Program-made: the position numbers and the translations under genes
Part shown: in pieces, positions 999-63,928 of the stretch
How the letters are laid out: every line of letters begins with the position of its first letter
Numbering within the stretch: the stretch's first letter is position 1
Notes under the pieces: generated by a model
Database searches by the model: none
The model's input: only the letters and a program-made list of their open reading frames with translations
What the model was told of the DNA's origin: nothing
Assembly (NCBI GenBank): GCA_013115145.1
Contig: JAAPAO010000075.1
Coordinates: forward strand, 25,518 to 89,517
From: Perkinsus chesapeaki ATCC PRA-425
Taxonomy: Eukaryota > Protista > Perkinsozoa
Direction of reading: 5' to 3'
Length of the DNA stretch: 64,000 nucleotides

Positions 999-1113
999 GA
1001 TGATTGGGGGGTGATTTCAGCCGTGGCTTTTTACTACGTCACTCATAGCTATATAGATAATTTATAGAAAACTTACGTTCCCCTTAGAAATATGTATTTC
1101 CCCATATAGCTTT

Positions 1114-3926
1114 TATCTGTCACAGATATGCCGCATATCATATGCGTGTTATAGACAGACAAAAGATAAGGGACCACTATGCGTAAGGTGACGCAGTAGG
1201 ATTATAATAACTACTAACAGGTGGTTCACGGCGCCTTGTCTTAGACAAGTTGTCTATGATGAAGACGATGATCTGCGAGGTCATCGTGAGTCCGAGTCGG
1301 ACTCAGCAGACTTGAGGAAGAGGTACTACTAGTAGACGTAACACTCGTGGTCATTCCAGAACTGCTGCTTGTAGATATTCTTGAAACGTGAAACGGCTGA
1401 CTCAGCTTCGCTCCCTTCTTCGACCTCTTGAAGAGGTCCTCTTCTGAGCAAGATCTCAAAGCGAAATGCACTAGACAGTGATGCTGTTAAAGCCCGCAGA
1501 GCAGAAGATGTTCTGTTCTTCTGACTACTGAGGCCTGCTTGTCAAGTTACTCAAACTTTGAGGCTCAAAGATAACCTCGAAGTAATCATCTTGACTTTCT
1601 AAAGTTCTCTGCTTGGGGAATTCCTCCTGTAACCTAGGTCCTCAAAGGGTTATTAAATTTCCTTTTAATCTTAGGGCCTCGACTCTCGGATCAGGTCGTG
1701 TTATCCCCATCAAAAGCATGTAATAATCTCCACAATCGGATCTCGAGCGGCGCTTATAGCGGCCTGTGCTTCAGCAAGACGTCGACAGTCCTCAACATCT
1801 TTTTCTGTATCCATCTCAGCAAAAGTTTCTTTGTTCGGACGGTATTCGAAAGGGTACCCTTCCTGAGCCAGTAAAAAGATTCCAATTCTTAGGAAAGATC
1901 GTGAAGAACCTCTTCTTAAGTGTTGAAGAAAGGCTGTCCGCTGAAGATCTACCGTACCTTCTTCTGGACGTAGTCCTGAAGCGTCCAAAAATAGATATGA
2001 CTCGATAGTTACTATCGGATAGTATCGAGTCGCTACTTTTCTTTTGACTAATGGCAGGAACCTCTATTATCAGGTCATCATAAGAACGGTTCTTAGAGCG
2101 CCTAAGACCTTATTTAGATGGCAGGTTAGACCTGAAGATCTTTCCACAGAGACATCTGGATACTTGCTTGCGGTAGATCCATCACGTAACCTTCACATAG
2201 ATTCTATGTCATAGAATGCCTTCGTTCCTTCAATTCTGTCTACGCGACCCTTCCTCTGCAGATCTATAAAAGCGGGACTGTGCCAGCGAACAGGCCATCA
2301 CGATCTTCCTCGGGTAACCAGAACTCAACCATAGAAAAGCCGAAGTCATGCACTACGGCTAGCTTACTAAGCTAAGCTCAGGGAACGTCAAACATGTCTC
2401 AGAAATACTTGTACTTATAAGCACATTTCTTTTATCTGATAAAATTTATCACTGTCCAAGTGACTCAACGCCCTCTGGCAGAAGGCCTCTGTCTTGCTTC
2501 CTCAGTCATATTTCCGTGAATCTGACCCAATTCCAAACTTTCATCGTCAGCGTCCTCTTTTTGTGGTGACTACAATGTAGTCTCTCTAGTAACTTTTTAC
2601 CTCCGGGTCCCGGAGTCCGGGCATTACAGGAGAGAATACAAGCTAGACTTAGTCTAGTAGACTGTTACCGACCGCCAAGAGGCGCGCTCTTGACGGAGGT
2701 ACCAAGCTTACTAGCATAGCCACGGAATATGCTGGCTACGATAGTTTGTAGGTGAAGTCCATAGCCCATACAATTTCCACAATCCAGTCCCGGTCGCCTT
2801 CATGTTATCGTATTCCGAGTCCACAAAGTCGTCAGACACGTCATTTTGCTGGCTATATTCAATGCCTGGAATACTTTCCGGAACCGAGGTATTACCTCGG
2901 AGGTAAGAATATACGAACCTGGTATATAGACTATATAATATAGTCTTCAATGTAGACTCTACAATGTAGAGTCTACATCGTATAGTGTTATATCGATATC
3001 GTGCCCATGATATCGACCGTGATATTATCGTTCATCATTCCAATGGGACTCTCTGAGAGTCCCGAGTCGGAGAGTCACTCTCCACCATCGCATTTGGCGA
3101 GATCGTAGACATATCCTGCGAAGACTTGAAAGCTCGAACCTTGAGCCTCAAAGTTGAGACTGCTAGACTATTAGTCTTGTGGCCTCACTTCTCTTAGATA
3201 AGTTCTTTCGCGGCTGGAGACATTACGGCGAGAGTCTGATATATATGCCCTAATATAATATTCAAGTTGAATAACGTTCCCCTCCTAAGACATCGACATA
3301 CCCTCGGAGGGTGTATAACGATTGGTACACATGAGTCATGTGACATGACTTACATACATACGTATACAGTGTACGGTACACTCGAGAATCGTACACAGAT
3401 TCTTGAGTCTCAAACAGTTTGAGTCAAACTAGTTACTAGTTTAAGGCACCTTAACTCGTGCTTACCGTGATGGTTTTGGAGAAGCGAGAGTACGAGCATT
3501 ACAGCCTGTAATTTTCAGGGACAGTAGTTGTTAGTTACACTGTGAAACTGTGTATTTGTCACAATAATTTGCACAAATAATTTGTGTAGTCTAACTCGCT
3601 CCGCTAGTTACAAGGCAGACGAAAGCTTCGTCACGAAGCCTACTGTGTCAATAATTCGCATCGGCATGCCCGATAACAAGCTGGAAGCAGCTCTGAGAGC
3701 TGACCCAGCTTAGCTGAGCTCTCATAAGACTTCCACTGGGGACACTTCGAGCTGCTCGAATCGAGCTTGGTATAATACCATGTTTCGACTTACAATAATT
3801 GTAAGTCGAAACGAATCGTTTCGCCTTACACTACTTTCATTGAATGACATCGCAGCGATGTCATACGATATGATTCATACCAACACTGCTACGTTCGGAG
3901 TCGTATGCGAGACTCGCATTGCGAGT
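1114..3926. repeat. Tract saturated with short perfect inverted repeats centred on one unpaired base
   Basis: More than 20 arm-N-arm palindromes with arms of 7 bp or longer, read directly: e.g. 2950-2978 (14-bp arms), 3844-3864 (10), 1287-1305 (9), 3045-3063 (9), 1422-1438, 2201-2217, 3334-3350, 3426-3442 (8). Confidence 0.9.
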
Positions 3927-4469
3927 TGCGTATCAGTGACACGTGGTACGGCATCACGATAAGCCTCGAATGATTGGACTTGCAGCTTGAACTGGGCTGC
4001 CCAGTCATATTCTCTTAATTGGACCAATATAGGATAATTGTGATATGCCCAGTGATACGTTACAGAACTCGACACGACACTTTCAAAAGAGTCGGAAGGC
4101 TTATCATAGGTGGAGCAGGGGAGCTACTACCTCGAAGGAGAAAAAATCTATGCCACTAGTATGTCCGTTGGAGAAGGGCAACAAAGAAGACTTCACTTGC
4201 AAGTAAGGGAGAACACAACTTCCAAAGGACATCACGCATATAGGAATATCTTATATCATATACATAGTATCATATGACAAGCCATCACTCGTATTCCAAA
4301 TATGTGTGAGGAAGTTCCTCGCGATAAAAAGTGCTATTCCCTTCTTGTCCAGCGGCTTTGACGGCCTGCTATTAACTGAATGAGCTACGACTGCTCAAAC
4401 CACGATCTCTATGACAGTAAGAGTTGAGGAGCTGAAACAACAGCAGGGCAACTCGATAGTCAGGCGGGA

Positions 4470-5519
4470 CTACTGAGCATTGCACTTCCGCGAAAGGGGG
4501 AAATACTGAGACCCACACTCAGAAAGATGGGCTTCAATCCATGTCTGATATCCATAGAAACATCTAACCCATTCGAAATAGTTGAGACCAATGTGGGTCT
4601 CGTGAGCAGGGAAAAAGTGGTCAAACCTGTAAGATGGGAGGATGCCGCCTCTGATCTCATCGAAGGCCTTCGTCATTGTGTTATAAGCATACAAGATTCC
4701 TCCATTCGGGTCATCAGGACAGGCGCTGAACTTAGCACACATCGACACGACGGAGCAGTCCTCGGGAAGCGTGCAGTCCCCTTCACCCAGAAAAGTGATT
4801 TTGGCCTTATAGTTGCAGTAGTAGTCGTTGTTACAGTTTGGGCAAGTTTCATTGAGGAAGATCTTGAACTTATCGTATAAACCAGCAGCGCTGTTGCTGA
4901 AAGTAGTCACGGTTACATGGTCAGATCTGGCCATGATCGTGTCAACCAGCCTTCTGTTGCTATTTACTGTGCGAAGGGATGCGCCAACTTTCACGTCATA
5001 ACCATGAAGAGTCTTCTTCATCTCATCGGTCTTGTCGAATATCTCCATCCATGCCTGGAGAGGGAGGTCGACATTGAAACTGATGGCGACTGGACCCAAG
5101 CTAGGATGAGTATAATGTAGATTGAACTCCTCGAATAATCTTACGAAGTCCAAAGCCCAAACAGTATCATTATACCCGGGAGCACCTCCAGCATAAAAGA
5201 GGTAGATGGTAGCTGTGTTGCCACTGACCTCGCGGAACTGACTTAGGAAATCGGCAAGTCTTTCGGGGGAAAGGAGATGTCCTTCATTAGATGCATCAGC
5301 TATGTTGAGATAGACATCACCACAGTTGTACTCCTTCGCCTGTGGAGTCTTGAAAAAGTCTATAAAGGAGGTATCATTGTCAGTCCAATAAGCTTGCCTC
5401 CAGGAGTAAGTCGCCATACACTTAGTCGATCTTTCGGACATCACACGGGGACCACGGAAGGGAGTAGCCTCGATGAGATTGGTAGAGAGTGCGATCAAGT
5501 AAGCTAGGACGAGGAGCAT
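4470..5519 (-). CDS. Secreted Cys-rich protein, paralogue 1 (intronless; remote GH18/TIM-barrel-like, catalytic motif degenerate)
   Basis: Uninterrupted ORF. Probable ATG at 5519 gives a hydrophobic signal peptide MLLVLAYLIALS. Family motifs ATYSW, CGDVYLNIAD, KAKITF, FEWVRC. Near-identical to 7981-9063. Confidence 0.85.
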   Translation of the reverse strand: MLLVLAYLIALSTNLIEATPFRGPRVMSERSTKCMATYSWRQAYWTDNDTSFIDFFKTPQAKEYNCGDVYLNIADASNEGHLLSPERLADFLSQFREVSGNTATIYLFYAGGAPGYNDTVWALDFVRLFEEFNLHYTHPSLGPVAISFNVDLPLQAWMEIFDKTDEMKKTLHGYDVKVGASLRTVNSNRRLVDTIMARSDHVTVTTFSNSAAGLYDKFKIFLNETCPNCNNDYYCNYKAKITFLGEGDCTLPEDCSVVSMCAKFSACPDDPNGGILYAYNTMTKAFDEIRGGILPSYRFDHFFPAHETHIGLNYFEWVRCFYGYQTWIEAHLSECGSQYFPLSRKCNAQ

Positions 5520-7980
5520 ACTTGCTGAACTTATCAATCCTGAAAAGGCATGCCTGTCTCTATGTGGAAGACCCCAAGGTGGCGAGAAAGTTCATTGTTC
5601 CTCGGCAAGAGTTTGATCCTGCGTGCTGGCAGATACAGCGAATTCTCCACGGAGATTCAACGGAGACGAACTCCCCTATGAAAGAAATACAGAGCACAAT
5701 AAGAATAATGTTGTTCCAGCAACAGATTCAGACATAGCTCTCGTGATTAGAAGGGGCATACGAGACATATTAGGCTGGGTCGAAGTTCGACCGTCGAACT
5801 GGCTCCTAATTTAACGATGGCGCGCAATAGACAGTTGGGTGGCGGTAAACTCCCGCGAGGGCCTCACCCAGCTATCGGCTTGCCAAGGAAAATAGAGATT
5901 ATCCATAATGGACACTGCACGAAGCTGGAAGATTCTAACATGTGACTCGATCAACGTTCCAATACCAGCAACTATAGACCATCATTATTGTATTACTGAG
6001 TGGCCTGCGTCTCATATGTGCCATGTGGAGCGCTGCTCCGCACAGTCGATGTGTAGTCCGCTGCTTGACCCATTCGCGACGGAGTAGAATATCTAGCGGA
6101 AAGCGACGGCCTCCGACTTGCACACTGGCTGATTATCACGCGTATGAATTTAGCCTACCTTCCGCGTAAAGCTCGATCAGCAATGTCAGTTGCACACGGG
6201 CGAGTGCTATGGTGACGCGTTTGTGCCACAAACGCGTCACCATAGCACTCGCCCACAAACTTTGTGGGCTCCGTGAAAACTGTTACCTTCAACAGAACAG
6301 TTATTACGATGTTAACGAAGATCATTCGTCGGACTCTACGTGAAGAAGTCGATTGGTATGATCTCAATGAAAATTGACTTGGATATTTTGCAGTGGATTA
6401 CAGGGAAAGGCGAGAGAAACGAGTGCATGCAATCGCGATTGGTGACCCGCCGAGCTTCAGCGGTGCGCTGATGAAGAAGTAGACAATATCATAAGCATCC
6501 CTTGCAGTTACAGTGTAATTATCACACACGATTAAAATGTTCGTGACACTCGAAAGTCAAGTGGGAGATGAGAAGAACAGTATTTCGATATTAAATACTA
6601 TTTAATGAGTAGCATTGAAATAATCCTAACAACGATGAATGGCGTAGTACCCATAAGTCAAGTATACGATTCGTATAATACGAATAATTAATGAGCAGCT
6701 TATAGACAATGTATGCAACCTGAAGCCGCCGTCACCGGAGCTCTCTTCTGATATAGTCGGCCTATCTCTTGTGAATCGCTACACGATACAGCAGAAGGTT
6801 TGTGTCAACAGAGCTTGGTTGAAAACTGTGAACTGCAATCTACGGACGGTCGAACCGCACTGTTTAATCCGGTAATCTACAGTCACCGATAGTCCATTTT
6901 CATATTACATGTTGCAATGCAACAGAAAAACCCTTCGATCCTTGACAAAAACCTGCCAGTGCGTGGACGCAAACAATGACCTTGCTTCTCGGAAAAGCAG
7001 ATGACCAGCTCATCATGACCTCTAACCAAGTGGGCATGCCCGCCATAATAATGTCAAAGAGTAAGTTAGTTGTCTCGTGGAGCTCTCATGCTGAGCTCTG
7101 GATACCCTTTTCTTGGCCTATAGGAACCCTATTGAAATGTTGAAGACCTTCTTGGGTTTAATAATGCCATAGTGACAATTTGTCACTGACAAACGGTTGT
7201 CCGTCAAGTCACGACAACCTTTGGATATTAATAAGCTCACATCTTTTTCTTGGAAATTCCCAGATAATCCTCAGTAGATTATCACACTGGTCCCGTATAT
7301 GTCGCCGCTCAAATCAACAGCGTTCAGCGAAATGAGTTACTGCCAGCATCAAGGTTCTCCGCCAGGGGAAAGCGGGATTCACAACTGCACTAAGTTAGTG
7401 CCACTAACGTACAAGACTTGTGCGCGGTACATTGTCACTGGCATCTGCCAGCGGCGTCCGCAGAAAGTAATCAAGAATCAGCATGCTTGATGAAGCTCGA
7501 CATCGCGGCCGTGTCGCATTGCTCTCCATAATCGCACCGTCTCATCCTGGGACTCCCAGGGCTTCTCGTGAAATCCCTATGCACGCTTGTGACGAGGTGA
7601 TCTGTCAAGAAGCTGTCACCTATGGATGGAGAGTGGGGACTCGTCTCTGGTGAGTATACGAATCGCTAGGATTGCAAATGCTAACTACCCGGAGAGTTCT
7701 TCAGCGAATTCATCGCACTTGCATGATACAGAACTCAATATAACGCAGTCAGAGAATTCGAGAAGGTCTTATCACCCATCGTTGTTTCAGCGGACTACCG
7801 CCCAGTTGGTAGAAAACTGTGTCTCGGTGACACTACCTATTCATCGCAGCGAGGCGGAGCGCATAGGAGAAGAAGTGCTACGGAACGTAGACTTTTGAAA
7901 TAAGATTAGTCTAGTAAGAATAACAGTACGGCTTTAGCAAACAGCGAATGTGAATCGAAATGATTCAATCATTGCACATA

Positions 7981-9063
7981 CTACTGAGCATTGCACTTCT
8001 GCGAAAGAGGGAAGTACTGTGACCCACACTCAGTAAGATTGGCTTCAATCCATGTCTGATATCCATAGAAACATCTAACCCATTCGAAATAGTTGAGACC
8101 AATGTGGGTCTCGTGAGCAGGGAAAAAGTGGTCAAACCTGTCAGATGGGAGGATGCCGCCTCTAATCGCATCGAAGGCCTTCTTCATTGTGCTATAAGCA
8201 TATAAGATTCCTCCATTCGGGTCATCAGGACAGGCGCTGAACTTAGCACACATCGACGCGACGGAGCAGTCCTCGGGAAGCGTGCAGTCACCTTCACCCA
8301 GAAAAGTGATTTTGGCCTTATAGTTGCAGTAGTAGTCGTTGTTACAGTTTGGGCAAGTTTCATTGAGGAAGATCTTGAACTTATCGTATAAACCAGCAGC
8401 GCTGTTGCTGAAAGTAGTCACGGTTACATGGTCAGATCTGGCCATGATCGTGTCAACCAGCCTTCTGTTGGTATTTACTGTGCTAAGGGACGCGTCAACT
8501 TTCACGTCATAACAGTGAAGAGTCTTCTTCATCTCATCGGTCTTGTCGAATATCTCCATCCATGCCTGGAGAGGGAGGTCAACATTGAAACTGATGCCGA
8601 CTGGACCCAAGCTAGGATGAGTATAATTAAGAGTGAACTCCTCGAATAATCTTACGAAGTCCAAAGCCCAAACAGTATCATTATACCCGGAAGCACCTCC
8701 AGCATAAAAGAGGTAGATGGTAGCTGTGTTGCCACTGACCTCGCGGAACTGACTCAGGAAATCGGCAAGTCTTTCGGGGGAAAGGAGATGTCCTTCATTA
8801 GATGCATCAGCTATGTTGAGATAGACATCACCACAGTTGTACTCCTTCGCCTGTGGAGTCTTGAAAAAGTCTATAAAGGAGGTATCATTATCAGTCCAAT
8901 AAGCTTGCCTCCAGGAGTAAGTCGCCATACACTTATTGGATGCTTCGGACATCACACGGGGACCACGGAAGGGACTTGCTTCGTTGAGATTAAAAGAGAT
9001 AGCGATCAGGCAGAATAGAACGAGGATCATGCTTGCTAAACTTTGGTAACCCTGAGAATACAT
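7981..9063 (-). CDS. Secreted Cys-rich protein, paralogue 2 (intronless)
   Basis: 360-aa ORF with signal peptide MILVLFCLIAISF. The mature region is almost identical to paralogue 1 at DNA level. Confidence 0.85.
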   Translation of the reverse strand: MYSQGYQSLASMILVLFCLIAISFNLNEASPFRGPRVMSEASNKCMATYSWRQAYWTDNDTSFIDFFKTPQAKEYNCGDVYLNIADASNEGHLLSPERLADFLSQFREVSGNTATIYLFYAGGASGYNDTVWALDFVRLFEEFTLNYTHPSLGPVGISFNVDLPLQAWMEIFDKTDEMKKTLHCYDVKVDASLSTVNTNRRLVDTIMARSDHVTVTTFSNSAAGLYDKFKIFLNETCPNCNNDYYCNYKAKITFLGEGDCTLPEDCSVASMCAKFSACPDDPNGGILYAYSTMKKAFDAIRGGILPSDRFDHFFPAHETHIGLNYFEWVRCFYGYQTWIEANLTECGSQYFPLSQKCNAQ

Positions 9064-12210: not shown

Positions 12211-12398
12211 TGTATCAATCCATCCCCTTCACTGGACGCAACAGGTGGTGACATTGACGGATTAAGCACCAATAAAGATACTGCCATAACACATTTCCTC
12301 ATAGACTGATACTTAATAGAAATAAGGGAACTTCTCGACTACTCCGCTGCGCTATGCATATGCGTGCAACTACTATTGGCGCTCGCCTTATGGCGACA
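12211..12398 (-). repeat. 3' LTR (188 bp)
   Basis: Base-for-base identical to 17057-17244, with TG...CA termini. Confidence 0.97.
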
Positions 12399-15300
12399 CT
12401 GCCACACGACAATGAAGACCAGCTAAGCGACAGCTAAATCGAGTACTCATGGCTGAGAAACGACCATACATAGAAGTGGTCACAGGAATCCACCTATCAC
12501 AGATGTCACATTGGACCCAACATTGGATCTCCTCGTCCTCACGCTCATAATACGGACATAGGTTGTAGACGCTCTGTAGAGGGGAAATATCTCTCAGACC
12601 ATGCCCTCCTTGACCTAATGACTTAATCTTCCTGAGAGAACCAGACACCCATTCTTCAATCTCATAAGGACCGGCAAACTTGAGAGAATGCTTGAAGTTA
12701 CTGGCCTCAGGACAATAAACAAGACACTTAGCACCAACCGGGAAAACGAATGGACCATGACGGACCCTTCTGCTCAACTTAACTTGTTGGACCTCCTTAA
12801 TGTCTTCCCAGAACCTTTGATACTGCTGGAGACGGAGTCCATACTCCTCCCGACGATGCTTATAGAGCTCCTCGAGAAAGACGTCTTCCTCGGGACATAA
12901 TAACTGACCGACTCCTCGCAACGCATCCTTCACCTCTTGACCCTCGGATGAGGTAGTTCGCCATGGTCTCAGCAGCTGGCGACCAAAGAAGAGATCACCA
13001 GGTCCGAACGAGAGACCAGGAAAGTAAGTGAGGTTATGAACCAGTTGCAGATCGTCGATCCACGTTGGCCATGACTTGATATCCTCACCAGATGCGTGCT
13101 TGGTTGCAAAATACTGCCTAAGATGTAGGTGACAGCGTTCCAGCCATCCCCCATAGCTCTTATGGTGGGGAGGTAACACTGCCACACGGATGTTCCTTAC
13201 CGAACACCACTCCTTAAAATGCTCGGACTTGAACCCACCATCGACCACGAAACATAGAGGCCACGAGATGTCAGCTAGAAGGGATTCTAGAATCTTCGTA
13301 GTCTCTGCCGTCTTTACGGTGCGACTCGCACGAAACCAAGTATAACCAGTAGCTGCACATACCACTGTCAGAACATGACGATAGTTTCCCTCGCCTGTCG
13401 GAAGGTTAGTGACATGATCCACTCCCAATATCTGTCCTGGAACAGTGGACTTCATCCGTAGGACTCCTACGGTTTTGCGCCACGCCACCGACGCATGAAC
13501 TCTTTGGCAAGGGTCGCAGCTTTTCAGACGGCTGCGGACGTAGCGATTCATACTTGGCCAATAATATTCCGCTTTTATCTCGCGGGATATGGCGTCTGCA
13601 CCAAGGTGTGTAGTGCGACTGTGATAATGGTCGATAACATCATAAATAAGGTTGTCCTTATCCACCTTTGGGTCGAGAACCACTTGATGCAGTACTTGGC
13701 CATCTGATGTAGTTCGGATAGCCCGACAGATCAGGTTATCTTCAACTACATGGTATTTGGTGGCATCTACTAGAAGTCGATGAGGAACCGAGCAATTAGG
13801 GGGACTTTTACCATTAACAATAAAATATTTTAAAGTAGACAAATAGGGTGACGTGTCTTGATGCACGCGTGCCCTTTGTCTCCACTCCGTAGGCGGACTC
13901 GTTGTGGTAGGGCCGATAGAAGTTTCGCTGCCGGCATTACTTACCACCGCCATGCATTGTAGGCCAAAGTCTTCCGCCGATAGACCAACGTCAGCACTGT
14001 GGGATGCCGCCTTCTGACCAGGGTCGTAGACCACCAAAGCAGAACCATTAGACCACTGTCTCGCGGTCTCCGCAGTCACCGACGTTGTAGGTTGAAAGCT
14101 TGATCTTGTAGGTGCATCTGCAAGATTAGAGGCAGACCTAACATGGGCCACTTTCCCTTGGAGGTTGGCTGTCCTCAATTTCTCGCAGACCACCCTTATT
14201 TCCCTAATCCATCTTTTCTCTAGACCTGACAGATCCTCGTCTAATTTGGGGCGTTTAAGACGCCACAAGCAGATGGCAGAATCAGTATAGAAGTAAACTG
14301 CTGATACGGGAATCTTGAAACTTCTACAGTTACCAAGTATCTCCATAGCTAGCCTGGTAGCCCTCCAGAGGGCATACAGCTCCTTTTTGGGTATAGACCA
14401 TCTGCATGTAGGAGCATAAATCCCAGCGATACTTCTCAAGGGATGTAGAGGACCATTTGTCGTTGATATTATAGGGCAGGTTGTTTGGGCACACCAAGCT
14501 CCCACTGAGCTATCAGAGAACGTATAAAGAATAGATAAGTTAAGTGCACGAGGAGTAGAAAAGGATGCTGACCTTACTGCATCATACCACTGCTCAACCT
14601 TTCCTTTCAGCTCCTCGGTGGCTGGTGTTTCCCAGTGTGGTAGCTCCTCATGTATTTGTGAGGCTAACTGGCGCGCACTCACGCCCACACCTATGAAGAA
14701 ACCAGCAATGTCATACCATACAGCTAATGCGCTGATTAACGACCTTTTGGTGACTGGTTTTGTGAGGGATAGCTGGGGCAGTTGCTGTATTATGAAATCC
14801 TTATCGACGTCCCAGATATACCCAAGATAAGATGTAGAACCAGAAGAGGAACCATCTGTGCTCACCCTTTTTAATGCTTGAAATATAAAGCCTTTTTCCT
14901 CGAAGCCCTCGACGACTACTTTTTCATTGCTATGAAGCTCGGACACTGTAGCACCTCTAACCCCAATATCATCTACAAATAGGGTAAAAGGCAGAGAGAC
15001 TTTGAGTTGCAAGGGCGGACTTCGTAGGGTTAATGACTCTTGTAATGATGCACTCGAAAAATTACAGCCAAAGGGTAAGCATAACCAAATATAGTGACCA
15101 CCAAAGGCATATATACCAAACCAGCATTGGCTAGACTCTGACAACTTGATGCAGTTGAATGCTCGCTGTAGATCCAGAGTCGTATAATGAACACTACTTC
15201 TCATAACTATTAAGACATCGGTTATGCGGAGCTTGCCTGCTGTGCTGCACTTGTGTGTATAATCATTTAAACGTCTTCCATCGACGGTGATCCTCACCTG

Positions 15301-17148
15301 GGTAGAGACCGATGAGGGCTTGTAGACGGGACGTAGAGGTAGATAGTAGGAGATATTATTTGGATGACACTCTCGAATGCGACCTAACTGTAACATAGTA
15401 TTTAACTCATTTTGAATGGCGTTCACATCGTCAGAAGTGGTGTGACGCAGGAGTGACTGGAAGCGACCATGTGCTTCCGCCTTGTTTAATTTAGGACGAG
15501 AAGATGTCTTCCAAGGAATGCTGACCTCAAAGTGATCGTCAAACTCTTGGACTGGAGCTGTAGGCTCGCCCGCAACCTCGTCGTCGCATTCATGATTTGA
15601 TAAGTCAGAAGAGGCAGCAGTATGGTAAGACTGAGAATCAGACTCAGTGTCATCAGAACCTTGCGTAAATCCAGCGATAACTCCGCAAGAAAAGACCGGT
15701 GCGCCCGAGGAAGATGGCTGTGAAGCTACGCCTCGGACGCCACTAGAGACTTTGGGTATAGAATCAGGACTTAATTCAATATTGATATGCAACTTACTGA
15801 GGGCATCCAAACCCAGAACGGCTTCGAACGCCAACTCACGGACCACCCAAAATAATAACAAGGAGCTAGTTTTAGATGTGCCAACATAACACAGAGTTTT
15901 CCCGATTAGGGGCATGGTACTTCCATTAGCCAAAGTGACATTACGGCTAGTTGGCAATTGTTCAATACTCAAACTAAGTTGTGTAGCTGCTGATAATGAG
16001 ATTAAATTGATTGTGCAGCCGGTGTCCAATAGACTCAGGACCAACTTACTGCTGGTGTCGTCAAGACCGCGATACTGGAGAGCTGCTGTTAGACTTCTGG
16101 TTGGCCTTTCGGGCACTGGCTTACTATCTCCATCTTGCACGACCATAACCAAGGGCCATAACTCATCTTCACCAGATTCATTGGCCTCATCAATGACCAC
16201 CATAGCAGAACCTTTAGCGTCACTGACACCAGTAGGGGCCTTCTTGGATGATTGTTCATGACGGAACTGACAACGGTCCCGATTACAGGTGCCGTACTGT
16301 GAGAATTGATGGCATATTCCCGCTGGCTTGTGCTCAGAGTTCGACGTAACTGAAGGCTTCGACTGACTGGGTGTTGGAACCGAGTGACTATAACGACACT
16401 TGTCGCCGTAACTACATACCCCTCTCAAGAAATGCCGGCATGTCTCCATCACTTTATGAGACTTATTTTTGTCGTTCTTGGGGGCGATTTTGTTTCGGGC
16501 TTTACTATTGCCCTTTGTCACTTTGAACTCATAGTACTCGGCCACCTCTTTCGCCTCCTCAAAGCACACGTACCGTGGACCTAGAAAGTTGTCAACTTTA
16601 TCATATATTGATGGTGCCAAACCATCGCGGAAGGCTCCGGCTTGGTCCACCTCACTTGGCTTGCTCCCGGTGGAGATGTGTATAATAGATGCCAATGACT
16701 TCACTCGATCAGCAAAGTCGTGAACAGTCTCACCAGGCTCTTGCTCGAGATGCTTCCACCTTTGGTTCATACCATAAGTGCGCCAGGACGCTTCATAACG
16801 GTTGTCTAAGCATTGCCAAACCTTCTCTTGGGAAATTCCCCCCAAATATGCAGATTGGACTTCGCTTAGTAGTGGTTGGTCCAAACACCTCATGAGGTAC
16901 TGAAAGCTCGCACCTCCTTTAAGCTCATATACTGCTTGTTGTTGTTGAACCAAGGTCTTAAACATCGGGTAAGGCATGTCTTGGCGTGGGCCAGACCAAA
17001 GGGGGTCTACACATACTGGGAGCTTGATAACATCGGCGATGGATATCCCGGTAGAATGTATCAATCCATCCCCTTCACTGGACGCAACAGGTGGTGACAT
17101 TGACGGATTAAGCACCAATAAAGATACTGCCATAACACATTTCCTCAT
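12388..17148 (-). CDS. Gag-Pol polyprotein: gag, 2x CCCH zinc finger, aspartic protease, RT, RNase H, integrase, C-terminal zf-CW-like finger
   Basis: 1586-aa ORF. CCCH fingers CRHFLRGVCSYGDKCRYSH and CHQFSQYGTCNRDRCQFRH; protease LLDTGC; RT YLPLRPVYKPSS, LDLQRAF, LPFG, FVDD; Pao-type LGYIWD and TKRSLIS; RNase H FSDSS, SIPKKEL, YTDS, NLADAPTR; integrase HHCC, VDH, VDGG, LER; C-terminal WVQCDICDRW...C...C. Confidence 0.95.
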   Translation of the reverse strand: MRKCVMAVSLLVLNPSMSPPVASSEGDGLIHSTGISIADVIKLPVCVDPLWSGPRQDMPYPMFKTLVQQQQAVYELKGGASFQYLMRCLDQPLLSEVQSAYLGGISQEKVWQCLDNRYEASWRTYGMNQRWKHLEQEPGETVHDFADRVKSLASIIHISTGSKPSEVDQAGAFRDGLAPSIYDKVDNFLGPRYVCFEEAKEVAEYYEFKVTKGNSKARNKIAPKNDKNKSHKVMETCRHFLRGVCSYGDKCRYSHSVPTPSQSKPSVTSNSEHKPAGICHQFSQYGTCNRDRCQFRHEQSSKKAPTGVSDAKGSAMVVIDEANESGEDELWPLVMVVQDGDSKPVPERPTRSLTAALQYRGLDDTSSKLVLSLLDTGCTINLISLSAATQLSLSIEQLPTSRNVTLANGSTMPLIGKTLCYVGTSKTSSLLLFWVVRELAFEAVLGLDALSKLHINIELSPDSIPKVSSGVRGVASQPSSSGAPVFSCGVIAGFTQGSDDTESDSQSYHTAASSDLSNHECDDEVAGEPTAPVQEFDDHFEVSIPWKTSSRPKLNKAEAHGRFQSLLRHTTSDDVNAIQNELNTMLQLGRIRECHPNNISYYLPLRPVYKPSSVSTQVRITVDGRRLNDYTHKCSTAGKLRITDVLIVMRSSVHYTTLDLQRAFNCIKLSESSQCWFGIYAFGGHYIWLCLPFGCNFSSASLQESLTLRSPPLQLKVSLPFTLFVDDIGVRGATVSELHSNEKVVVEGFEEKGFIFQALKRVSTDGSSSGSTSYLGYIWDVDKDFIIQQLPQLSLTKPVTKRSLISALAVWYDIAGFFIGVGVSARQLASQIHEELPHWETPATEELKGKVEQWYDAVRSASFSTPRALNLSILYTFSDSSVGAWCAQTTCPIISTTNGPLHPLRSIAGIYAPTCRWSIPKKELYALWRATRLAMEILGNCRSFKIPVSAVYFYTDSAICLWRLKRPKLDEDLSGLEKRWIREIRVVCEKLRTANLQGKVAHVRSASNLADAPTRSSFQPTTSVTAETARQWSNGSALVVYDPGQKAASHSADVGLSAEDFGLQCMAVVSNAGSETSIGPTTTSPPTEWRQRARVHQDTSPYLSTLKYFIVNGKSPPNCSVPHRLLVDATKYHVVEDNLICRAIRTTSDGQVLHQVVLDPKVDKDNLIYDVIDHYHSRTTHLGADAISREIKAEYYWPSMNRYVRSRLKSCDPCQRVHASVAWRKTVGVLRMKSTVPGQILGVDHVTNLPTGEGNYRHVLTVVCAATGYTWFRASRTVKTAETTKILESLLADISWPLCFVVDGGFKSEHFKEWCSVRNIRVAVLPPHHKSYGGWLERCHLHLRQYFATKHASGEDIKSWPTWIDDLQLVHNLTYFPGLSFGPGDLFFGRQLLRPWRTTSSEGQEVKDALRGVGQLLCPEEDVFLEELYKHRREEYGLRLQQYQRFWEDIKEVQQVKLSRRVRHGPFVFPVGAKCLVYCPEASNFKHSLKFAGPYEIEEWVSGSLRKIKSLGQGGHGLRDISPLQSVYNLCPYYEREDEEIQCWVQCDICDRWIPVTTSMYGRFSAMSTRFSCRLAGLHCRVAVSP

Positions 17149-17244
17149 AGACTGATACTTAATAGAAATAAGGGAACTTCTCGACTACTCCGCTGCGCTA
17201 TGCATATGCGTGCAACTACTATTGGCGCTCGCCTTATGGCGACA
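17057..17244 (-). repeat. 5' LTR (188 bp)
   Basis: Identical to 12211-12398. Confidence 0.97.
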
Positions 17245-18302: not shown

Positions 18303-18565
18303 GGCTGGGATTCAGGAAATGAGACTAGTTTTTCATCGAAAGTTTCGATTCGAAACCTACTGGAGATTAATGGATTGAATTCACATACATTTGGAGTGTA
18401 TGAATATCTCATGCTCCCCGTGAAGCTTTCAAATTGGGCTTTTCGTTGGTAATAATGACTTTTATTTCGTCTCTATTTCTGAATAGTAAATACCACTATA
18501 CGGTAAAACTCCGCTCAATTTCAGTAAACGAAATACAGACTTATTTCATTTCCTGAATCCCAGCC
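18303..18565. mobile_element. 263-bp MITE with 20-bp TIRs and TTAA target duplication (Kolobok-like termini)
   Basis: GGCTGGGATTCAGGAAATGA at 18303-18322 and its exact reverse complement at 18546-18565. TTAA at 18299-18302 and 18566-18569. Confidence 0.85.
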
Positions 18566-22194: not shown

Positions 22195-23241
22195 CTACTG
22201 AGTGGCGCATTGTTGTGAGGCACCGAAATATTGTGAACCACACTCAGTAAGATTGGCTTCAATCCACGTCTGATAACCATAGAAACATCTAACCCATTCG
22301 AAATGATTAAGACCGATATGAGTCTCGTCAGCAGGGAAAAAGTGATCAAACTTGTATGGTAGGAGGATCTTAGCACTTGTGTATTCAATGGCATGCATAA
22401 GCTTGTCATAGGCATATAAGATTCCTCCATCCGGATCACTGGGGCATGCGCTGAACTTTGCACACATGGAGCCTTCTTTGCAGTTTCGTTTGGTTCTGCA
22501 ATCACCTTCACCAATGAATGTTATCTTGGCCTTATACTCGTCGTACTTGGCGGTGCTACAGTAGGGGCAAGTTTTGGTTAAGAACTTCTCGAAAAGCTCC
22601 ACCAGTCCGTCGTAGTTATTGCTGGGGGTTATTACGTTGACGTGATCAGCCCTATACATAATCTTATCCACCAAAGCTGGTTTGGCTCTCTTGAAATCCT
22701 CAAAAGTAACGTCAACTTTCACGTCATAACCATGAAGAGTCTTCTTCATCTCATCGGTCTTGTCGAATATCTCCATCCATGCCTGGAGAGGGAGGTCAAC
22801 ATTGAAACTGATGCCGACTGGACCCAAGCTAGGATGAATATAATTTAGAGTGAACTCCTCGAATAATCTTACGAAGTCCAAAGCCCAAACAGTATCATTA
22901 TACCCGGGAGCACCTCCAGCATAAAAGAGGTAGATGGTAGCTGTGTTGCCACTGACCTCGCGGAACTGACTTAGGAAATCGGCAAGTCTTTCGGGGGAGA
23001 GGAGATGTCCTTCATTAGATGCATCAGCTATGTTGAGATAGACATCACCACAGTTGTACTCCTTCGCCTGTGGAGTCTTGAAAAAGTCTATGAAGGTGGT
23101 ATCATTGCCAGTCCAATAAGCTTGCCTCCAAGAGTAAGTCGCCATACAACCCTTGCTGGTGCCGTGAGCTTGCGAGTCAGAATCAAGGGTAATAGCAGCA
23201 GCCCCAAGAATAGCAATCGAGTTGAAGATGACGAACCGCAT
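22195..23241 (-). CDS. Secreted Cys-rich protein, paralogue 4 (mosaic of near-identical and divergent blocks)
   Basis: 348-aa intronless ORF with signal peptide. About 22711-23148 is nearly identical to paralogues 1/2, while about 22340-22710 is divergent. Confidence 0.85.
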   Translation of the reverse strand: MRFVIFNSIAILGAAAITLDSDSQAHGTSKGCMATYSWRQAYWTGNDTTFIDFFKTPQAKEYNCGDVYLNIADASNEGHLLSPERLADFLSQFREVSGNTATIYLFYAGGAPGYNDTVWALDFVRLFEEFTLNYIHPSLGPVGISFNVDLPLQAWMEIFDKTDEMKKTLHGYDVKVDVTFEDFKRAKPALVDKIMYRADHVNVITPSNNYDGLVELFEKFLTKTCPYCSTAKYDEYKAKITFIGEGDCRTKRNCKEGSMCAKFSACPSDPDGGILYAYDKLMHAIEYTSAKILLPYKFDHFFPADETHIGLNHFEWVRCFYGYQTWIEANLTECGSQYFGASQQCATQ

Positions 23242-24311: not shown

Positions 24312-26124
24312 ATGTTATCATCATCAACCCCTGATGACTACCCGCAAGAAGATCAAGATCCCCAGCCCTCCAGCACCACCGGATCAGTGGTATCAAGCCC
24401 TACTACCAGTGTAGTTGATCTTGGCACCGGTCGCCCTATCACCTTGCCAGCAGCCGAGGCCAGAGTTGTTCAAGAAGTACCAATAACGCGGGTTGAATTA
24501 TCGACCAGTGTTCCCATGTAGGTACTCAGCTTCGGAGAGCTCTCGGACTTCCCCGCTGGCTCGGCAGAGAGACGCCTAATAGTTGGTGTCATGGACCCCG
24601 CCGCGACCGCTGACGAGGCCCTCGAGTCTGTGAAGTAGAAGTGACCTCGGCAGATGCCTCAGTGAAGACTCGTTTTAGTTTGGCGACCAAGGAGGATGGC
24701 ATCGATTGTCGGGGAGCAATAAACAGCGTGAACGGCATGACTTTGTTGTTTTACGCTGCCCGAAGAGTTGACGATGAAAGCAGTCGCGACGTGTGCCGTG
24801 GACTGATAAAAGACTACCGACTCGACCCTCATGTCGTTGATCGGGCGATGCGACAGACTGCCCTCTTCTACGCCGCCTTGGTAGTAGTGGTGGGGGGCAC
24901 CAGCCGCGCCTGGTGGAAGTGCTGTGTTGTTATTTAGTTGGGCCACGCGTTGACGATAGACCTGTTCCTCTCGTTGGGGGTCAGAGCTGCCTTGCCGGAC
25001 GTTCACAATCAGACAGCGCTGTACTATTGTAGCAGAGAAGGGCACATTGAGGCGATGAGACGGCTGCTGGACGCATCCCCGCCGGGCGAGATCAACCATC
25101 GGGACTGTAACGGTCAGACGGCTCTCTATTACGCTGCCAAAACCGAGCAACTGGAGGCCTGTGTCTGCCTTGTTGAAGAGTACGGTTGTGACCCATGTGC
25201 TGTGGACAGCTTCGGTGCGACGGCAAGGTCATGCGCTCCGGCAAAGAGCGAGGTGGAGCAATACCTGAAACGAGCTGAGAGTGGCATACTAACGTCGGTG
25301 GGGATTGGTTCCCGGAAAAGGAAGACTGTTGGCGGCGGAGGAGATCCCCTGCTCAAGCTGGAGCCTCACAACCCTCCGACTACCAACGTCAGGCGGGTGT
25401 ATCGGCTGGTCCGTTCCAAGGGTAACAGCCATCCGTCTTCACCAGCGTTGCGGTACCTCCCCGAGCCTCTTGGAGAGGATAAACCGGTTGCTAGCAGCGA
25501 CCTTAGGGAGAAGGCCATTGACCATTTCTGCGTCCTTTACCCTGTCATATCGGCCATGGGTGGCGCGCCGTTTTGGCAGCCCTGGAGGGGACCGTTCCGG
25601 CAACTTACGGGTTTGATGAAGCGGTATGTGAACGGATGGATATTTCACAAGTTCCCGGACGAGACGACGGCACCTGGTTACTCGAGTGTGGTGGCGGATC
25701 CTATCGATTTGACGATGATTTGTCACAAGTTGGACCATCGGCAGTACGCTATGGCGCTGCAGGTGGACAGTGATGTGAAGAGGGTAGTAGGAGCTTTGAT
25801 TGGGGGGTGCTTCGCTCCGCTAAGATATGTTATTTTTAGATGTTCGCCAACAGTTATCTCTATAATGGGAGGGAGAGCGTTGTCGGTCTGTTGACGCGAT
25901 CGTGTGAAGTTTACTATGAGCAGCAACTGACTGGTATGGGGTTGCCGGAGGCGATGAAGGCCGAGGAGGATAGGATAGTTAAAGTGTATCGCAGTTCTAT
26001 AAGTCGATACCAATACTCCTCCAATGGAGTATTGCTGGGTGGGATGGATCAAGAAGAGCAACGGAAGGAGGTAGACTTTGAAGTCAAAGTGGAGAGTCCG
26101 CCGCCCCCACAGTGTGGTGTATGA
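24312..26124 (+). CDS. Ankyrin-repeat plus bromodomain protein (BDP1-like architecture), spliced
   Basis: Ankyrin repeats GMTLLFYAA, QTALFYAA, NQTALYYCSREGH, GQTALYYAAK. Bromodomain WIFHKFPD..APGYSSVVADPIDL and, after a short intron, MFANSYLYN with the conserved Asn. Confidence 0.9.
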
Positions 26125-26575
26125 TAGGGATCAGCGGAGCGAAGCTGTTGGTAGTTTTTTTTCCCGATATGTTACTCGGTGACTGCTTGTCATAGTGGTC
26201 GCTGTGAGACCGTGATGAATGTGTGGTCCCATACGTCCATAGTGACACGTGCTTCTGATCTCATCATCTTATTCGTCGTGTTCGCGGTAGTAGTATTTTC
26301 CGTAATATATTTTTACTGTATTATCATCATCATGATCGATAAGGGAGGGGAGAATCTGATAGTCATCATTTATACGTAATAGTTGCATTGTTGGCAAGTG
26401 GTGTGTCGCGTTGTGGAAGTAAAGCTTGAATTGGCAGGGTGATAAATGGAAGATTCTACGACGGAGAAGGTTGAAGGGTAAATTGGAGGAGAATACGGTA
26501 TGAAATATGATGGCAATGGCAGGTTGTTGAAGTGCGGCGATACTGTGGGAGAATTAGGTGAGGAGGAGAAGGCTA

Positions 26576-27064: not shown

Positions 27065-27127
27065 CTTTGTAAGTTTGGAAGGTTTTAAACCGGGCCCAAA
27101 ATCTTAGTGGATTTCGCGTGTGAAGGA

Positions 27128-33379: not shown

Positions 33380-33409
33380 AGACCTCAAGTTCGAACCCCG
33401 GTGAAGGCA
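33380..33409 (+). repeat. 30-bp direct repeat resembling a tRNA 3' end (copy 1)
   Basis: AGACCTCAAGTTCGAACCCCGGTGAAGGCA, identical at 34416-34445. B-box plus acceptor 3' strand, followed by TTTT. Confidence 0.7.
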
Positions 33410-61953: not shown

Positions 61954-63928
61954 CTGAACATTGGCACGTCTTTATTTACCGACGCGCGAACTGGGCAGTG
62001 TACCTCATGCTACTCATTACTGTGCATTACAAATTTAGTAATATGATTCCAATAGTAACTCGTTCCGTGTGTTTTCACTAGTCCGGTAAACAAAGCCGAA
62101 CTCGCTGTGCACCGCGGGACGCGATAGAAGCCTCTAGAGACTCGACTGCTGGGTATGACACGACAAACCCAATTCTCATCAACATGGGTATCAGCAAAGA
62201 CCTTTATCATGAAGCAAGGTTAGTAGTTACTTCAAGGTTATCAAAGAATCTCGGTCATACTTTTTATAACGTTGCTAGTCCACTCACCACTCCAATTGTT
62301 GGTTGGCTCTGTTTCAAGTAATATGCACCGATATGATCCCTATGGAGAATCTCCTCCGCGTAAGTGGTGCTTGGATTGCCCACTATACTTCTGAGAAGTG
62401 TGATGAGAGTTGTTTTACCAACACCTGAGAAAGTAACCGGGTTATGAAGGACGCCTTGGAGTTGACTAAATGACCAGTCATTAGTATTATTCTTTGCTAC
62501 CGTAGAATGTTAACAAGTCTTTCTTGCTAGACTGTGTAATCCGATAGGGATACCTACCAGAATCTCCCACGACGGTGACTCTCCCCTCAGACGCTTCTTT
62601 ACAAGTATCCATGTGCTTGCTGTTCATCGGCTTTCTCTTGAGAGGAACGAAGTAAGGCGTGTCGCTTGCTGAGGATTCGGAGCGTACCATTCGAGGGATA
62701 ACCCTGGGATTGGATTTAATCCACAAGTCCAATCAATGGGAATCCCAAGTGGAGCCTTCTATGGCTTGAAATTCGCAAGTTGGCTCTCTCTCTCTGTGTT
62801 CGGACCGCGTGTACAGATTTGGTCCTTATCAGCAGCTTTTCCTAGAAGTTCATCGCAGCCGGCATTGAGTGTATTATTGTATAAATGAATAATTTATAAT
62901 TGCATTCTACTCAATGTATAAATGAGTGTATTATAGTACTAAAGCGGCAGCTTCATGGAATTTCGATATTGATAGAAGAGAATGGAACTAGTAGAGTCCT
63001 ATTTCCATTTCCCAGAGACTGTTGGATCATCCGCATCGGACGATCCAATTAAAATGGTTATAGTGGCATGCAATAGCCCGAAACCGTCAACATCTAGCAA
63101 AACTACGATCCTCAAATTGAGGACCTGAATGCACTCTATAACGGAGAAATGCTGGAACCGGATTTCTTGGTTGCTCGAATAGAATTCAAAGAACTCAAAA
63201 GCCAAATAAGCTAAATACTATTCAATTGTATTGTAGCTATTTCTTCAGAGCCAAGTTCAGAACTGCTGCATAATTGTCACAAACGGTGATGATTATCCTC
63301 ACGTCATAAAAATATCCGGTAGCGCTGCTTATACTGTATAGCGCAGGATCGACGAGCTCTACTGCGAATCCTTCATGATCCGGATTCAATAGTCTCGTCC
63401 TTCCTTGTTTACCAAGTGCACAGTGAGTGTGGCACAATGTCGGTCTCGAGCAGAGGATTCGGTGTTCACCACTACTACTTCCTAGTTCTATTCACGCAAT
63501 GTCAAGGATCTACTAAACAATCGACTTCAGCCCACAACATCTTCTCCCCCTCCGTATAGATTCCTTTGTATGTGTCAGCTGACACGATGAAAGAAGTCAA
63601 CTTCATACTTGCTGACACCAACTGTTGGTGTTGGCTCATGTTGGTGACCAACATGTCGACCAAAAAGCCGTATGTAGCCTTATGGTGACTCAAAAACCCC
63701 CAAGTATTCAACTCAGTTCTGTTGCGATAACAGTAACGTACGGCTTGGCCTTTCATCATGAAAGTTACACGATTCAGTGGCGTAGCTGGGTACTTGACAG
63801 TGGGGGGGGGGGCAAGGTGGGGGCAGACCTACACCGCTAAGGGTCAATTACTGCCCCCAAAACCCATACCCCACAGCACCCATACCTGCCAGCAGGCGGG
63901 GCAGCGTGGGGGCGAGCACTGCTGCCGG

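What the first reader, a model, noticed from the sequence alone, without database searches (positions are those of the whole stretch)
1114..3926. DNA rewritten into odd-centred perfect palindromes: signature of an undescribed hairpin-templated mutational process
Seen: more than 20 perfect inverted repeats with arms of 7-14 bp in 2.8 kb, nearly all with exactly one unpaired central base. Examples are 1114, 1132, 1235, 1287, 1422, 2003, 2010, 2081, 2195, 2201, 2360, 2437, 2643, 2950, 3045, 3069, 3328, 3334, 3368, 3409, 3426, 3572, 3844, 3905 and 3912. Uniform random sequence predicts about 0.17 such sites (2800 x 4^-7). Several overlap in chains, one arm seeding the next (2003/2010, 2195/2201, 3328/3334, 3905/3912), and the arms share no consensus. 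Isolated examples occur elsewhere in non-coding DNA (5778, 18335, 18342, 23304, 36944, 43640). The underlying minus strand at 1240-2350 looks like a stop-riddled former ORF. Established: flank hairpins made by hAT/RAG-type transposases leave palindromic P-nucleotide footprints, and template switching perfects quasi-palindromes. Inference: iterative snap-back repair or repeated hairpin opening has overwritten an old element, possibly as a TE-inactivation route distinct from RIP.
Basis: partly seen in the sequence, partly recalled or inferred. Interest (0 to 1): 0.85.

Follow-up and report, generated by a model that had tools for sequence, protein, structure and literature searches.

The report
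Transposon excision scars riddling a dead gene
The odd-centred palindromes are real, but they are 14-base scars that a hAT-type cut-and-paste jumping gene most likely left each time it hopped out, packed unusually densely and uniformly into a dead helicase gene of the shellfish parasite Perkinsus.

Summary
Observation confirmed. The tract 1114-3926 holds 45 perfect palindromes with one central base (about 0.15 expected) and the window holds 89 (about 3 expected). Arm length starts sharply at 7.

Most palindromes belong to one 22-bp structure, x-D-y'-rc(D)-x'-D-y. This is an 8-bp site xDy rewritten as forward, reverse-complement, forward. Only unit length 8 is enriched.

New here: the tract's minus strand (about 1713-2642) is a pseudogene of a DEAD/Helicase_C helicase that is an open 791-aa frame in P. 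olseni. Every break in colinearity of +12 bp or more falls on a scar: +14 four times, then +28, +25 and +12. The residues encoded by the target site are read twice. The scars are therefore 14-bp insertions with an 8-bp target duplication, not in-place rewriting.

Three features fit hAT excision through flank hairpins, repaired by annealing of the 8-nt duplication:
- twin long palindromes that rebuild one shared target site;
- a two-round 36-mer;
- a T2/A7 target bias.

The same scars occur in sampled P. olseni and P. marinus DNA. No transposase and no filled site was found.

The scan has already reported this scar type on other pieces of this genome. The chemistry is known; this uniformity and density were not found described in the papers I searched.

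The parts
1114..3926 (.). Dense field of excision scars. It lies in the 4.16-kb intergenic region between a 349-aa chitinase-like gene (4470-5519, minus) and a 1319-aa gene that starts at window 307 and runs upstream of the window.
   Evidence: 45 odd-centred perfect palindromes. 27 non-overlapping 22-mers with 3 or fewer mismatches, which is about 378 bp or 13% of the tract. Gene table of L005. No odd palindromes in the flanking genes or in the 5.5 kb upstream of the window.
1713..2642 (-). Pseudogene of a DEAD/Helicase_C (SF2, DEAH-like) helicase. Nine homology blocks (a-i) match residues 423-692 of the open 791-aa P. olseni reading frame (55-324 of its annotated product P0017).
   Evidence: phmmer E=2.3e-25. 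tblastn E=4e-48. Three-frame ungapped block map. Pfam hits on the P. olseni ORF. After the scars are collapsed, one HSP spans q423-599 in a single frame.
2601..2622 (.). 22-bp scar (1 mismatch) at pseudogene junction a|b. It adds exactly 14 bp. The 'PG' codons CCCGGA are present in both the first and the third arm.
2561..2582 (.). 22-bp scar (1 mismatch) at junction b|c. It adds exactly 14 bp.
2430..2492 (.). Two scars, 2430-2451 (perfect, target TTTTATCA) and 2471-2492 (3 mismatches), at junction c|d. The net change is +25 bp, which equals 28 minus one codon.
2360..2381 (.). 22-bp scar (1 mismatch) at junction d|e. It adds exactly 14 bp, and residues 126-129 are read twice.
2195..2216 (.). 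Perfect 22-bp scar (target ACATAGAA) at junction f|g. The net change is +12 bp, read as 14 minus a separate 2-nt deletion. The 'FY' codons sit in the duplicated target.
2081..2102 (.). Scar at junction g|h. It adds exactly 14 bp, but one outer arm differs at 3 of 6 bases from the other two arms (unexplained).
2003..2036 (.). Two overlapping scars, 2003-2024 (perfect, target CGATAGTA) and 2015-2036 (4 mismatches), at junction h|i. Together they add exactly 28 bp.
1125..1146 (.). Perfect 22-bp scar, target GATATGCG. Further perfect scars in the tract: 1235-1256, 1423-1444, 2885-2906, 2923-2944, 3328-3349, 3409-3430, 3905-3926. One-mismatch scars: 1549, 2643, 3361, 3498, 3618, 3746 (start coordinates).
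2943..2978 (.). 36-bp five-arm structure, read as two rounds of insertion and excision at the last 8 bp of the first scar. All six spacer bases (G, A, C, A, G, T) are as the model predicts.
   Evidence: Sequence. The model is derived in the report.
3045..3083 (.). Twin palindromes (arms 9 and 7, 5-nt filler) that rebuild one 8-bp target at 7 of 8 positions.
6198..6269 (.). Twin long palindromes (arms 28 and 9) joined through a 4-nt overlap (GCCC). Both rebuild the same target GTTTGTGG at 8 of 8 positions.
63615..63655 (.). Twin palindromes (arms 8 and 9, 5-nt filler) that rebuild target CACCAACA at 8 of 8 positions.
5778..5799 (.). Perfect 22-bp scar outside the tract. Others: 6663-6684, 7172-7193, 7387-7408, 18335-18356, 39126-39147, 39433-39454, 45545-45566. 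Where gene tables exist (39126, 39433, 45545, 5778-7408) the scars are intergenic.
3782..3864 (.). Lone longer odd palindromes (3782-3812 arm 15, 3807-3823 arm 8, 3844-3864 arm 10) with no recognisable third arm. They are read as one-sided hairpin footprints.

Best explanation
The palindromes are donor-site scars of a cut-and-paste DNA transposon that makes 8-bp target duplications and excises through hairpins on the flanking DNA. This is the hAT type.

Shown:
- Each standard scar is 22 bp, made of (target minus its last base) + reverse complement of the target + (target minus its first base). It adds 14 bp to what was continuous sequence.

Inferred mechanism:
- Insertion duplicates the 8-bp target xDy.
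- At excision the transposase nicks one base into each flank and joins that 3'-OH to the opposite strand. Each flank then ends in a hairpin whose tip is the complement of the base next to the element.
- Perkinsus opens or unfolds these hairpins at least 8 nt from the tip, giving two 3' tails.
- The two tails both carry the reverse complement of the target, so they anneal over 8 nt. Flaps are trimmed and gaps filled, which gives the uniform 22-mer.
- When the tails join elsewhere, by 4-nt microhomology or with filler, twin long palindromes result. When one side is lost, a lone palindrome remains.
- Repeated hops, probably short-range, piled at least 27 scars into this 2.8-kb tract. At least 10 of them lie in the remains of a helicase gene.
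For: Geometry:
- 20 perfect, 17 one-mismatch and 10 two-mismatch 22-mers against about 0 simulated.
- Of 27 D-N-rc(D)-N-D cores, 20 have both spacers complementary to the outer bases, where chance gives 1/16.
- Only unit length 8 with an odd centre is enriched: 20, against 0 for lengths 7 and 9-12 and 0-1 for even-centred versions at any length.

Insertion with target duplication:
- Against the P. olseni homologue, all seven length discontinuities of +12 bp or more in the pseudogene fall on scars. They are +14, +14, +14, +14, +28, +25 and +12.
- The only junction without a scar is a 1-nt frameshift.
- Target-encoded residues are read twice.
- Collapsing the scars fuses 8 blocks in 3 frames into one HSP covering q423-599.

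Independent products of the same model:
- Twin palindromes rebuild one shared 8-bp target at 6198-6269 and 63615-63655 (8/8 each) and at 3045-3083 (7/8), where about 0.15 pairs are expected by my rough estimate.
- Two more such pairs occur in P. olseni, 8/8 each.
- The 36-bp two-round scar at 2943-2978 fits the same model.

Target bias:
- T at position 2 or A at position 7 in 46 of 112 cases, against a background of 0.26, p=4.5e-4.
- This is the direction of the Hermes/hAT nTnnnnAn preference (PMC10368747).

Literature:
- Ac/Ds footprints are palindromes centred on the complement of the base next to the element. Arms reach 20 nt in yeast, and joining uses microhomology (PMC5873905, PMC1978519).

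Reality of the sequence.
Against: - No transposase domain was found in any stop-free frame of 95 aa or more in the window.
- No TIR element flanked by an 8-bp duplication was found in 113 kb of sampled Perkinsus DNA. The agent is therefore inferred, not seen.
- No allele with an empty or filled site was found; the runs show no indel variants.
- The T2/A7 bias is weak (41%).
- Short P-nucleotide footprints, which dominate hAT excision in plants and Candida, are absent. An unusual host repair step therefore has to be assumed.
- Two junctions deviate from multiples of 14 (+12, +25), and the scar at 2081 has one arm with 3 changes.
- The extreme local density is about 1 scar per 100 bp, against 1 per 270-1000 bp in other intergenic DNA of the window. 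It is explained only by assuming local hopping.
Confidence: 0.8

Rival explanations
1. The scars have the same origin, but the element belongs to another hairpin-forming or 8-bp-duplicating superfamily (Mutator-like, or an undescribed one), not hAT.
For: MULEs also form flank hairpins and make 8-10-bp duplications (PMC5499845). No element was caught in place. Earlier scan notes report MULE and Chapaev/Transib-like transposases in this genome (untested by me).
Against: The unit is 8 bp without exception, and 9 and 10 give 0. MULE excision in yeast is over 90% precise (PMC5499845). The one-base offset and the T2/A7 bias are hAT hallmarks (PMC10368747, PMC5873905). Transib and Chapaev make duplications of 5 and 4 bp; this last point is my own knowledge.
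Confidence: 0.1
2. A transposon-independent process. Iterative snap-back or template-switch synthesis, or a host hairpin-forming nuclease, writes palindromes into dispensable DNA.
For: No transposon is seen at or near any scar. The scars cluster and chain. Lone palindromes with arms of 7-28 nt exist.
Against: Template switching has no reason to use exactly 8 nt with a one-base offset at both turns. It would not produce twin palindromes that share one 8-bp target, nor a symmetric T2/A7 site bias. The scars add 14 bp and duplicate the target instead of replacing sequence. A target duplication implies a staggered integration step.
Confidence: 0.06
3. Sequencing, amplification or assembly artefact.
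For: The contig ends in a 70-nt poly-G run, which is a technical artefact. Inverted chimeras are known from amplified DNA.
Against: The tract is identical in single contigs of four runs from two studies at about 36-138x. The same scar type is present in two P. olseni assemblies and in the P. marinus ATCC 50983 assembly. The scars avoid genes and show graded decay of 0-4 mismatches.
Confidence: 0.01

Closest known systems
Ac/Ds, Tam3, hobo and Hermes (hAT superfamily) excision footprints formed through flank hairpins and microhomology-mediated joining
   Same: 8-bp target duplication. Palindromic additions centred on the complement of the base next to the element. Use of microhomology. Long arms, up to 20 nt, reported in yeast (PMC5873905, PMC1978519). 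The nTnnnnAn target tendency (PMC10368747).
   Different: Here one product dominates: the full 8-nt inverted target, giving a 22-bp scar. Short 1-4-nt P-nucleotide footprints are not enriched. Scar density reaches about 1 per 100 bp and about 13% of a tract. The scars are seen as fixed genomic fossils in three species, not in an excision assay. The element itself was not found here.
V(D)J coding-joint P nucleotides (RAG, Transib)
   Same: A covalently closed hairpin on the flanking DNA, opened off-centre, gives palindromic additions.
   Different: By my own knowledge RAG and Transib nick exactly at the border, which should give even-centred palindromes, and Transib duplicates 5 bp. Here the palindromes are odd-centred with an 8-bp unit, and even-centred triple structures are at chance level (0-1 at any unit length).
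Quasipalindrome correction by template switching
   Same: Produces perfect inverted repeats.
   Different: That process perfects a pre-existing imperfect palindrome without a fixed length and without a target duplication. Here 14 bp are added to non-palindromic coding sequence.

Membership tests
hAT-superfamily excision footprint | 8-bp target-site duplication | tested here: met
   Only unit length 8 is enriched (20, against 0 for 7 and 9-12). The pseudogene alignment shows +14 bp per scar, with target-encoded residues read twice.
hAT-superfamily excision footprint | [quoted passage not shown] | tested here: met
   In 20 of 27 cores both spacer bases are complementary to the outer target bases, where chance gives 1/16. 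There are 89 odd-centred palindromes against 4 even-centred. The rule is stated for Ac/Ds in PMC5873905.
hAT-superfamily excision footprint | Target preference nTnnnnAn | tested here: met
   The bias is weak but significant: T2/A7 in 46 of 112 cases against a background of 0.26, p=4.5e-4. It is also seen in the P. marinus sites alone, 12 of 26. The consensus is from PMC10368747.
hAT-superfamily excision footprint | An hAT element (transposase, short TIRs) present in the genome and at filled sites | tested here: not met
   No transposase Pfam domain in 112 stop-free frames of the window. No TIR plus 8-bp duplication in the window, L002, L006 or L008. Earlier scan notes claim hAT-like elements elsewhere in this genome, which I did not test.
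hAT-superfamily excision footprint | Empty site equals the simple 8-bp target in a related, uninterrupted sequence | tested here: met
   This holds at protein level only. The P. olseni open frame is continuous across all ten scar positions. No allelic empty site was available.
Mutator-like (MULE) excision footprint | 9-bp (8-10-bp) target duplication of variable length | tested here: not met
   Triple structures with unit 9 or 10 number 0.
Transib/RAG-type footprint | 5-bp duplication and an even-centred hairpin | tested here: not met
   Even-centred triple structures number 0-1, at chance level, at every unit length. For the odd geometry at unit 5, 1 is observed and 1.0 simulated.
Template-switch quasipalindrome correction | In-place perfection of an existing imperfect repeat, with no fixed length and no net insertion | tested here: not met
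   The length is fixed and each event adds 14 bp to non-palindromic coding sequence.

The most novel reading that the evidence does not exclude
Perkinsus mends essentially every hAT donor break by one pathway: hairpins opened far from the tip, then annealing of the 8-nt duplicated target. Each hop of a few very mobile, low-copy elements would then leave a self-identifying 22-bp scar. The genome would hold a countable, datable fossil trail of cut-and-paste activity. That trail destroys genes, adds 14 bp per hop, and builds more than 10% of some intergenic DNA. The missing short-footprint class would point to a lineage-specific lack of tip-proximal hairpin opening or of classical end joining.
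Probability: 0.35. Interest if true: 0.75.

Novelty: new variant of a known kind. Interest (0 to 1): 0.6.

Why it matters
Excision of cut-and-paste transposons is usually invisible in genomes, because footprints are short and varied. Here the footprint is long, uniform and recognisable from sequence alone, and it carries its own target site.

Past transposition could therefore be counted, mapped and roughly dated by arm decay across whole Perkinsus genomes. Its contribution to gene death and intergenic growth could be measured.

The uniform outcome also reports on how an early-branching myzozoan opens DNA hairpins and joins breaks.

For annotation, these scars explain frameshifted pseudogenes and many 'palindrome' oddities in Perkinsus assemblies.

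Tried and rejected
- **Allelic or strain polymorphism.** I laid 4 runs on 1100-7000. The tract is identical everywhere and shows no indels, so no empty or filled allele was found.
- **Blind collapse of the scars in the tract.** The longest stop-free frame did not lengthen beyond random 14-bp-deletion controls. The block map later explained this: extra -1, -2 and -3 lesions and decayed scars that I had not collapsed.
- **Paralogue or LTR comparison inside the window.** The two 188-bp LTRs (12211-12398 and 17057-17244) are identical and free of scars. The three chitinase-like paralogues share only their ORFs.
- **Other copies of the BEL/Pao element.** A protein search with the RT region found nothing at E<=1e-20. 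Exact look-ups of two ORF products failed.
- **Orthologous intergenic comparison.** The AAA_33 orthologues are only 55-67% identical in protein, so the flanks cannot be aligned.
- **Unexcised elements.** None with an exact 8-bp duplication plus TIRs in 113 kb.
- **Transposase domains in the window.** None.
- **N-terminal (DEAD) half of the helicase in 2643-3926.** No detectable homology, before or after collapse.
- **Shorter P-nucleotide footprints (gap 2-7) and other unit lengths.** Not enriched.
- **Literature.** No paper in the held library links Perkinsus with these palindromes. Yu et al. 2004 was not available.

Full report
**1. The observation**

The tract 1114-3926 has 45 such palindromes with arms of 7 or more and none with another loop size. 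The window has 89, against 4 with no central base.

Observed counts against order-2 Markov simulations are 63 vs 2.6 (arm 7), 15 vs 0.5 (arm 8) and 6 vs 0.2 (arm 9). The onset at 7 is sharp. The 63:15:6 fall-off is what chance extension gives, so the process makes arms of exactly 7.

The sequence is real. The stretch 1100-4559 lies in single contigs with no differences in four runs from two studies.

**2. Anatomy**

Palindromes 7 nt apart form one 22-bp structure, x-D-y'-rc(D)-x'-D-y, with D of 6 nt.
- There are 20 perfect, 17 one-mismatch and 10 two-mismatch copies, against about 0 simulated.
- 63 of the 89 palindromes belong to such triples.
- Of 27 D-N-rc(D)-N-D cores, 20 have both spacer bases complementary to the outer bases, where chance gives 1/16.
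- The analogous structure for unit lengths 5, 7 and 9-12 is not enriched (0-1 copies, as simulated; two at 6, one of them inside an 8-unit scar). The even-centred version occurs 0-1 times at any length, as simulated.
- Shorter versions, in which the two D copies lie 2-7 nt apart, are at chance level.

In words, an 8-bp site xDy is replaced by (site minus last base) + reverse complement of the site + (site minus first base), a gain of 14 bp.

Three further structures fit the same rule.
- 2943-2978 is a five-arm 36-mer. All six of its spacers are those predicted if the last 8 bp of a first scar were hit a second time.
- The pairs of longer palindromes at 6198-6269 (arms 28 and 9) and 63615-63655 (arms 8 and 9) each rebuild one and the same 8-bp target from their two halves, 8 of 8 positions.
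- The pair at 3045-3083 does so at 7 of 8 positions. I estimate about 0.15 such pairs by chance.

**3. What lies underneath: the new evidence**

An exhaustive protein search with the stop-free frame 1713-2063 (minus) found a P. olseni protein, P0017, at E=2.3e-25.

In P. olseni this protein lies in an open 791-aa frame with DEAD and Helicase_C domains. It is distantly like Prp43/DHX15 helicases.

An ungapped three-frame map gives nine colinear blocks between window 2642 and 1713, matching residues 55-324 of P0017. At each block junction I computed how much extra DNA the tract holds.

| Junction | Scar(s) at the junction | Extra DNA |
|---|---|---|
| a\|b | 2601 | +14 |
| b\|c | 2561 | +14 |
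| c\|d | 2430 and 2471 | +25 (28 minus one codon) |
| d\|e | 2360 | +14 |
| e\|f | none | -1 (plain frameshift) |
| f\|g | 2195 | +12 (14 minus 2) |
| g\|h | 2081 | +14 |
| h\|i | 2003 and 2015 | +28 |

The residues encoded by the 8-bp target are read twice, once in each outer arm. An example is the 'PG' codons CCCGGA at 2621-2616 and again at 2607-2602.

Collapsing the scars merges eight blocks in three frames into one alignment over residues 423-599 of the 791-aa frame.

So the scars are 14-bp insertions with an 8-bp target duplication into formerly continuous coding DNA. The P. olseni sequence serves as the empty site. This rules out in-place rewriting.

**4. Context**

The window is the last 64 kb of GenBank contig JAAPAO010000075.1 in assembly GCA_013115145.1. 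Its nearest protein relatives are from P. olseni and P. marinus. Earlier scan notes name the organism as P. chesapeaki.

The tract fills the intergenic region between a chitinase-like gene and a 1319-aa gene. The flanking genes and the 5.5 kb upstream of the window have no odd palindromes. Elsewhere in the window the scars are sparser, and where gene tables exist they are almost all intergenic.

The same scars occur in other species.
- A 7.3-kb P. olseni contig has two perfect 22-mers and two twin palindromes that rebuild their targets 8/8. A second assembly shares the scars lying in the region the two contigs have in common.
- One 21-kb P. marinus locus has 8 perfect and 5 one-mismatch 22-mers.
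- Another P. marinus locus (20.6 kb) and two gene-dense P. olseni contigs have none.

**5. Mechanism**

Known chemistry explains the geometry. hAT transposases make 8-bp duplications with an nTnnnnAn preference (PMC10368747). They excise through hairpins on the flanking DNA (PMC5499845).

Ac/Ds footprints are palindromes centred on the complement of the base next to the element. Their arms reach 20 nt in yeast, and they are joined through microhomology (PMC5873905, PMC1978519).

Suppose both hairpins are opened 8 nt or more from the tip. Each 3' tail then carries the reverse complement of the target, and the two tails are complementary over 8 nt. Annealing, flap removal and fill-in give exactly the 22-mer, wherever the nick fell. 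This repair step is inferred.

Joining elsewhere gives the twin palindromes, through the 4-nt overlap GCCC at 6251-6254 or with 5-nt fillers. Loss of one side gives lone palindromes.

The inferred targets show T at position 2 or A at position 7 in 46 of 112 cases, against a background of 0.26 (p=4.5e-4). The bias is also present in the P. marinus sites alone.

**6. What is missing**

No transposase domain was found in the window. No element with TIRs and an 8-bp duplication was found in 113 kb. No polymorphic allele was found.

Earlier notes of this scan report hAT-like, MULE (9-bp duplications) and Chapaev-like elements elsewhere in this genome. I did not test them.

The very high local density needs an extra assumption, either short-range hopping of a resident element or a local insertion hotspot. 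The scar at 2081 has one outer arm changed at 3 of 6 bases, although it adds exactly 14 bp. I cannot explain this.

**7. Verdict**

It is wrong in proposing a new mutational process that rewrites DNA.

The best reading, at confidence 0.8, is scars of hAT-type transposon excision repaired in one stereotyped way.

The same scar type was already reported by this scan on other pieces of this genome.
- the homology-based proof of +14 bp with target duplication inside a dead helicase gene;
- the exclusivity of the 8-bp unit;
- the T2/A7 bias;
- the presence of the scars in sampled P. olseni and P. marinus DNA.

I found no description of this in the searchable literature.

Noticed in passing
window 12211-17244: A complete LTR retrotransposon with identical 188-bp LTRs and one 1586-aa ORF. 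The ORF carries a CCCH zinc finger, an aspartyl protease, RT, the Pao-type peptidase A17 and integrase H2C2 domains. A BEL/Pao-like element in an alveolate parasite of molluscs is unusual, because (from my own knowledge) BEL/Pao is regarded as largely metazoan, so transfer from a host is conceivable. It carries no 22-bp scars.
   Followed up: partly
window 63931-64000: The contig ends in a run of about 70 G. This is almost certainly a sequencing-chemistry artefact at the contig end, not biology.
   Followed up: no
window 36899-36979: An even-centred perfect palindrome with 19-nt arms (36899-36936) lies directly beside an odd-centred one (36944-36972, arms 14, or 21 with one mismatch). The even one does not fit the scar rule. 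It may be a small foldback element or a different kind of event.
   Followed up: no
window 4470-5519, 7981-8952, 22195-23241: Three paralogous genes of about 350 aa (75-95% identical) have no Pfam domain. The P. marinus relative is labelled 'Chitinase' by UniRef. The word depth of the reads is 2-7 times higher there, so more copies exist in the genome.
   Followed up: partly
window 1423-1444 and 39126-39147: Two unrelated scars share the same first seven target bases (ACCTCTT). This is unlikely by chance (about 1-2%) and may hint at a stronger target preference than the logo shows.
   Followed up: no
window 2081-2102: This scar adds exactly 14 bp to the pseudogene, but one outer arm differs from the other two arms at 3 of 6 bases, all of them A changed to G or C on the plus strand. 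The other two arms are perfect.
   Followed up: partly
L006 6611-6672 (P. olseni): A twin-palindrome scar (arms 21 and 7) sits inside the 3' part of the 791-aa helicase frame. It adds 54 bp, a multiple of 3, so the frame stays open. A scar may thus have been absorbed into a coding sequence.
   Followed up: no
window 26000-36000: There is strong, sign-changing GC skew (up to +0.36, then down to -0.27), and no stop-free frame reaches 180 aa. A cNMP-binding gene of 831 aa starts at 36396 (minus strand) and runs into this region. The cause of the skew was not examined.
   Followed up: no
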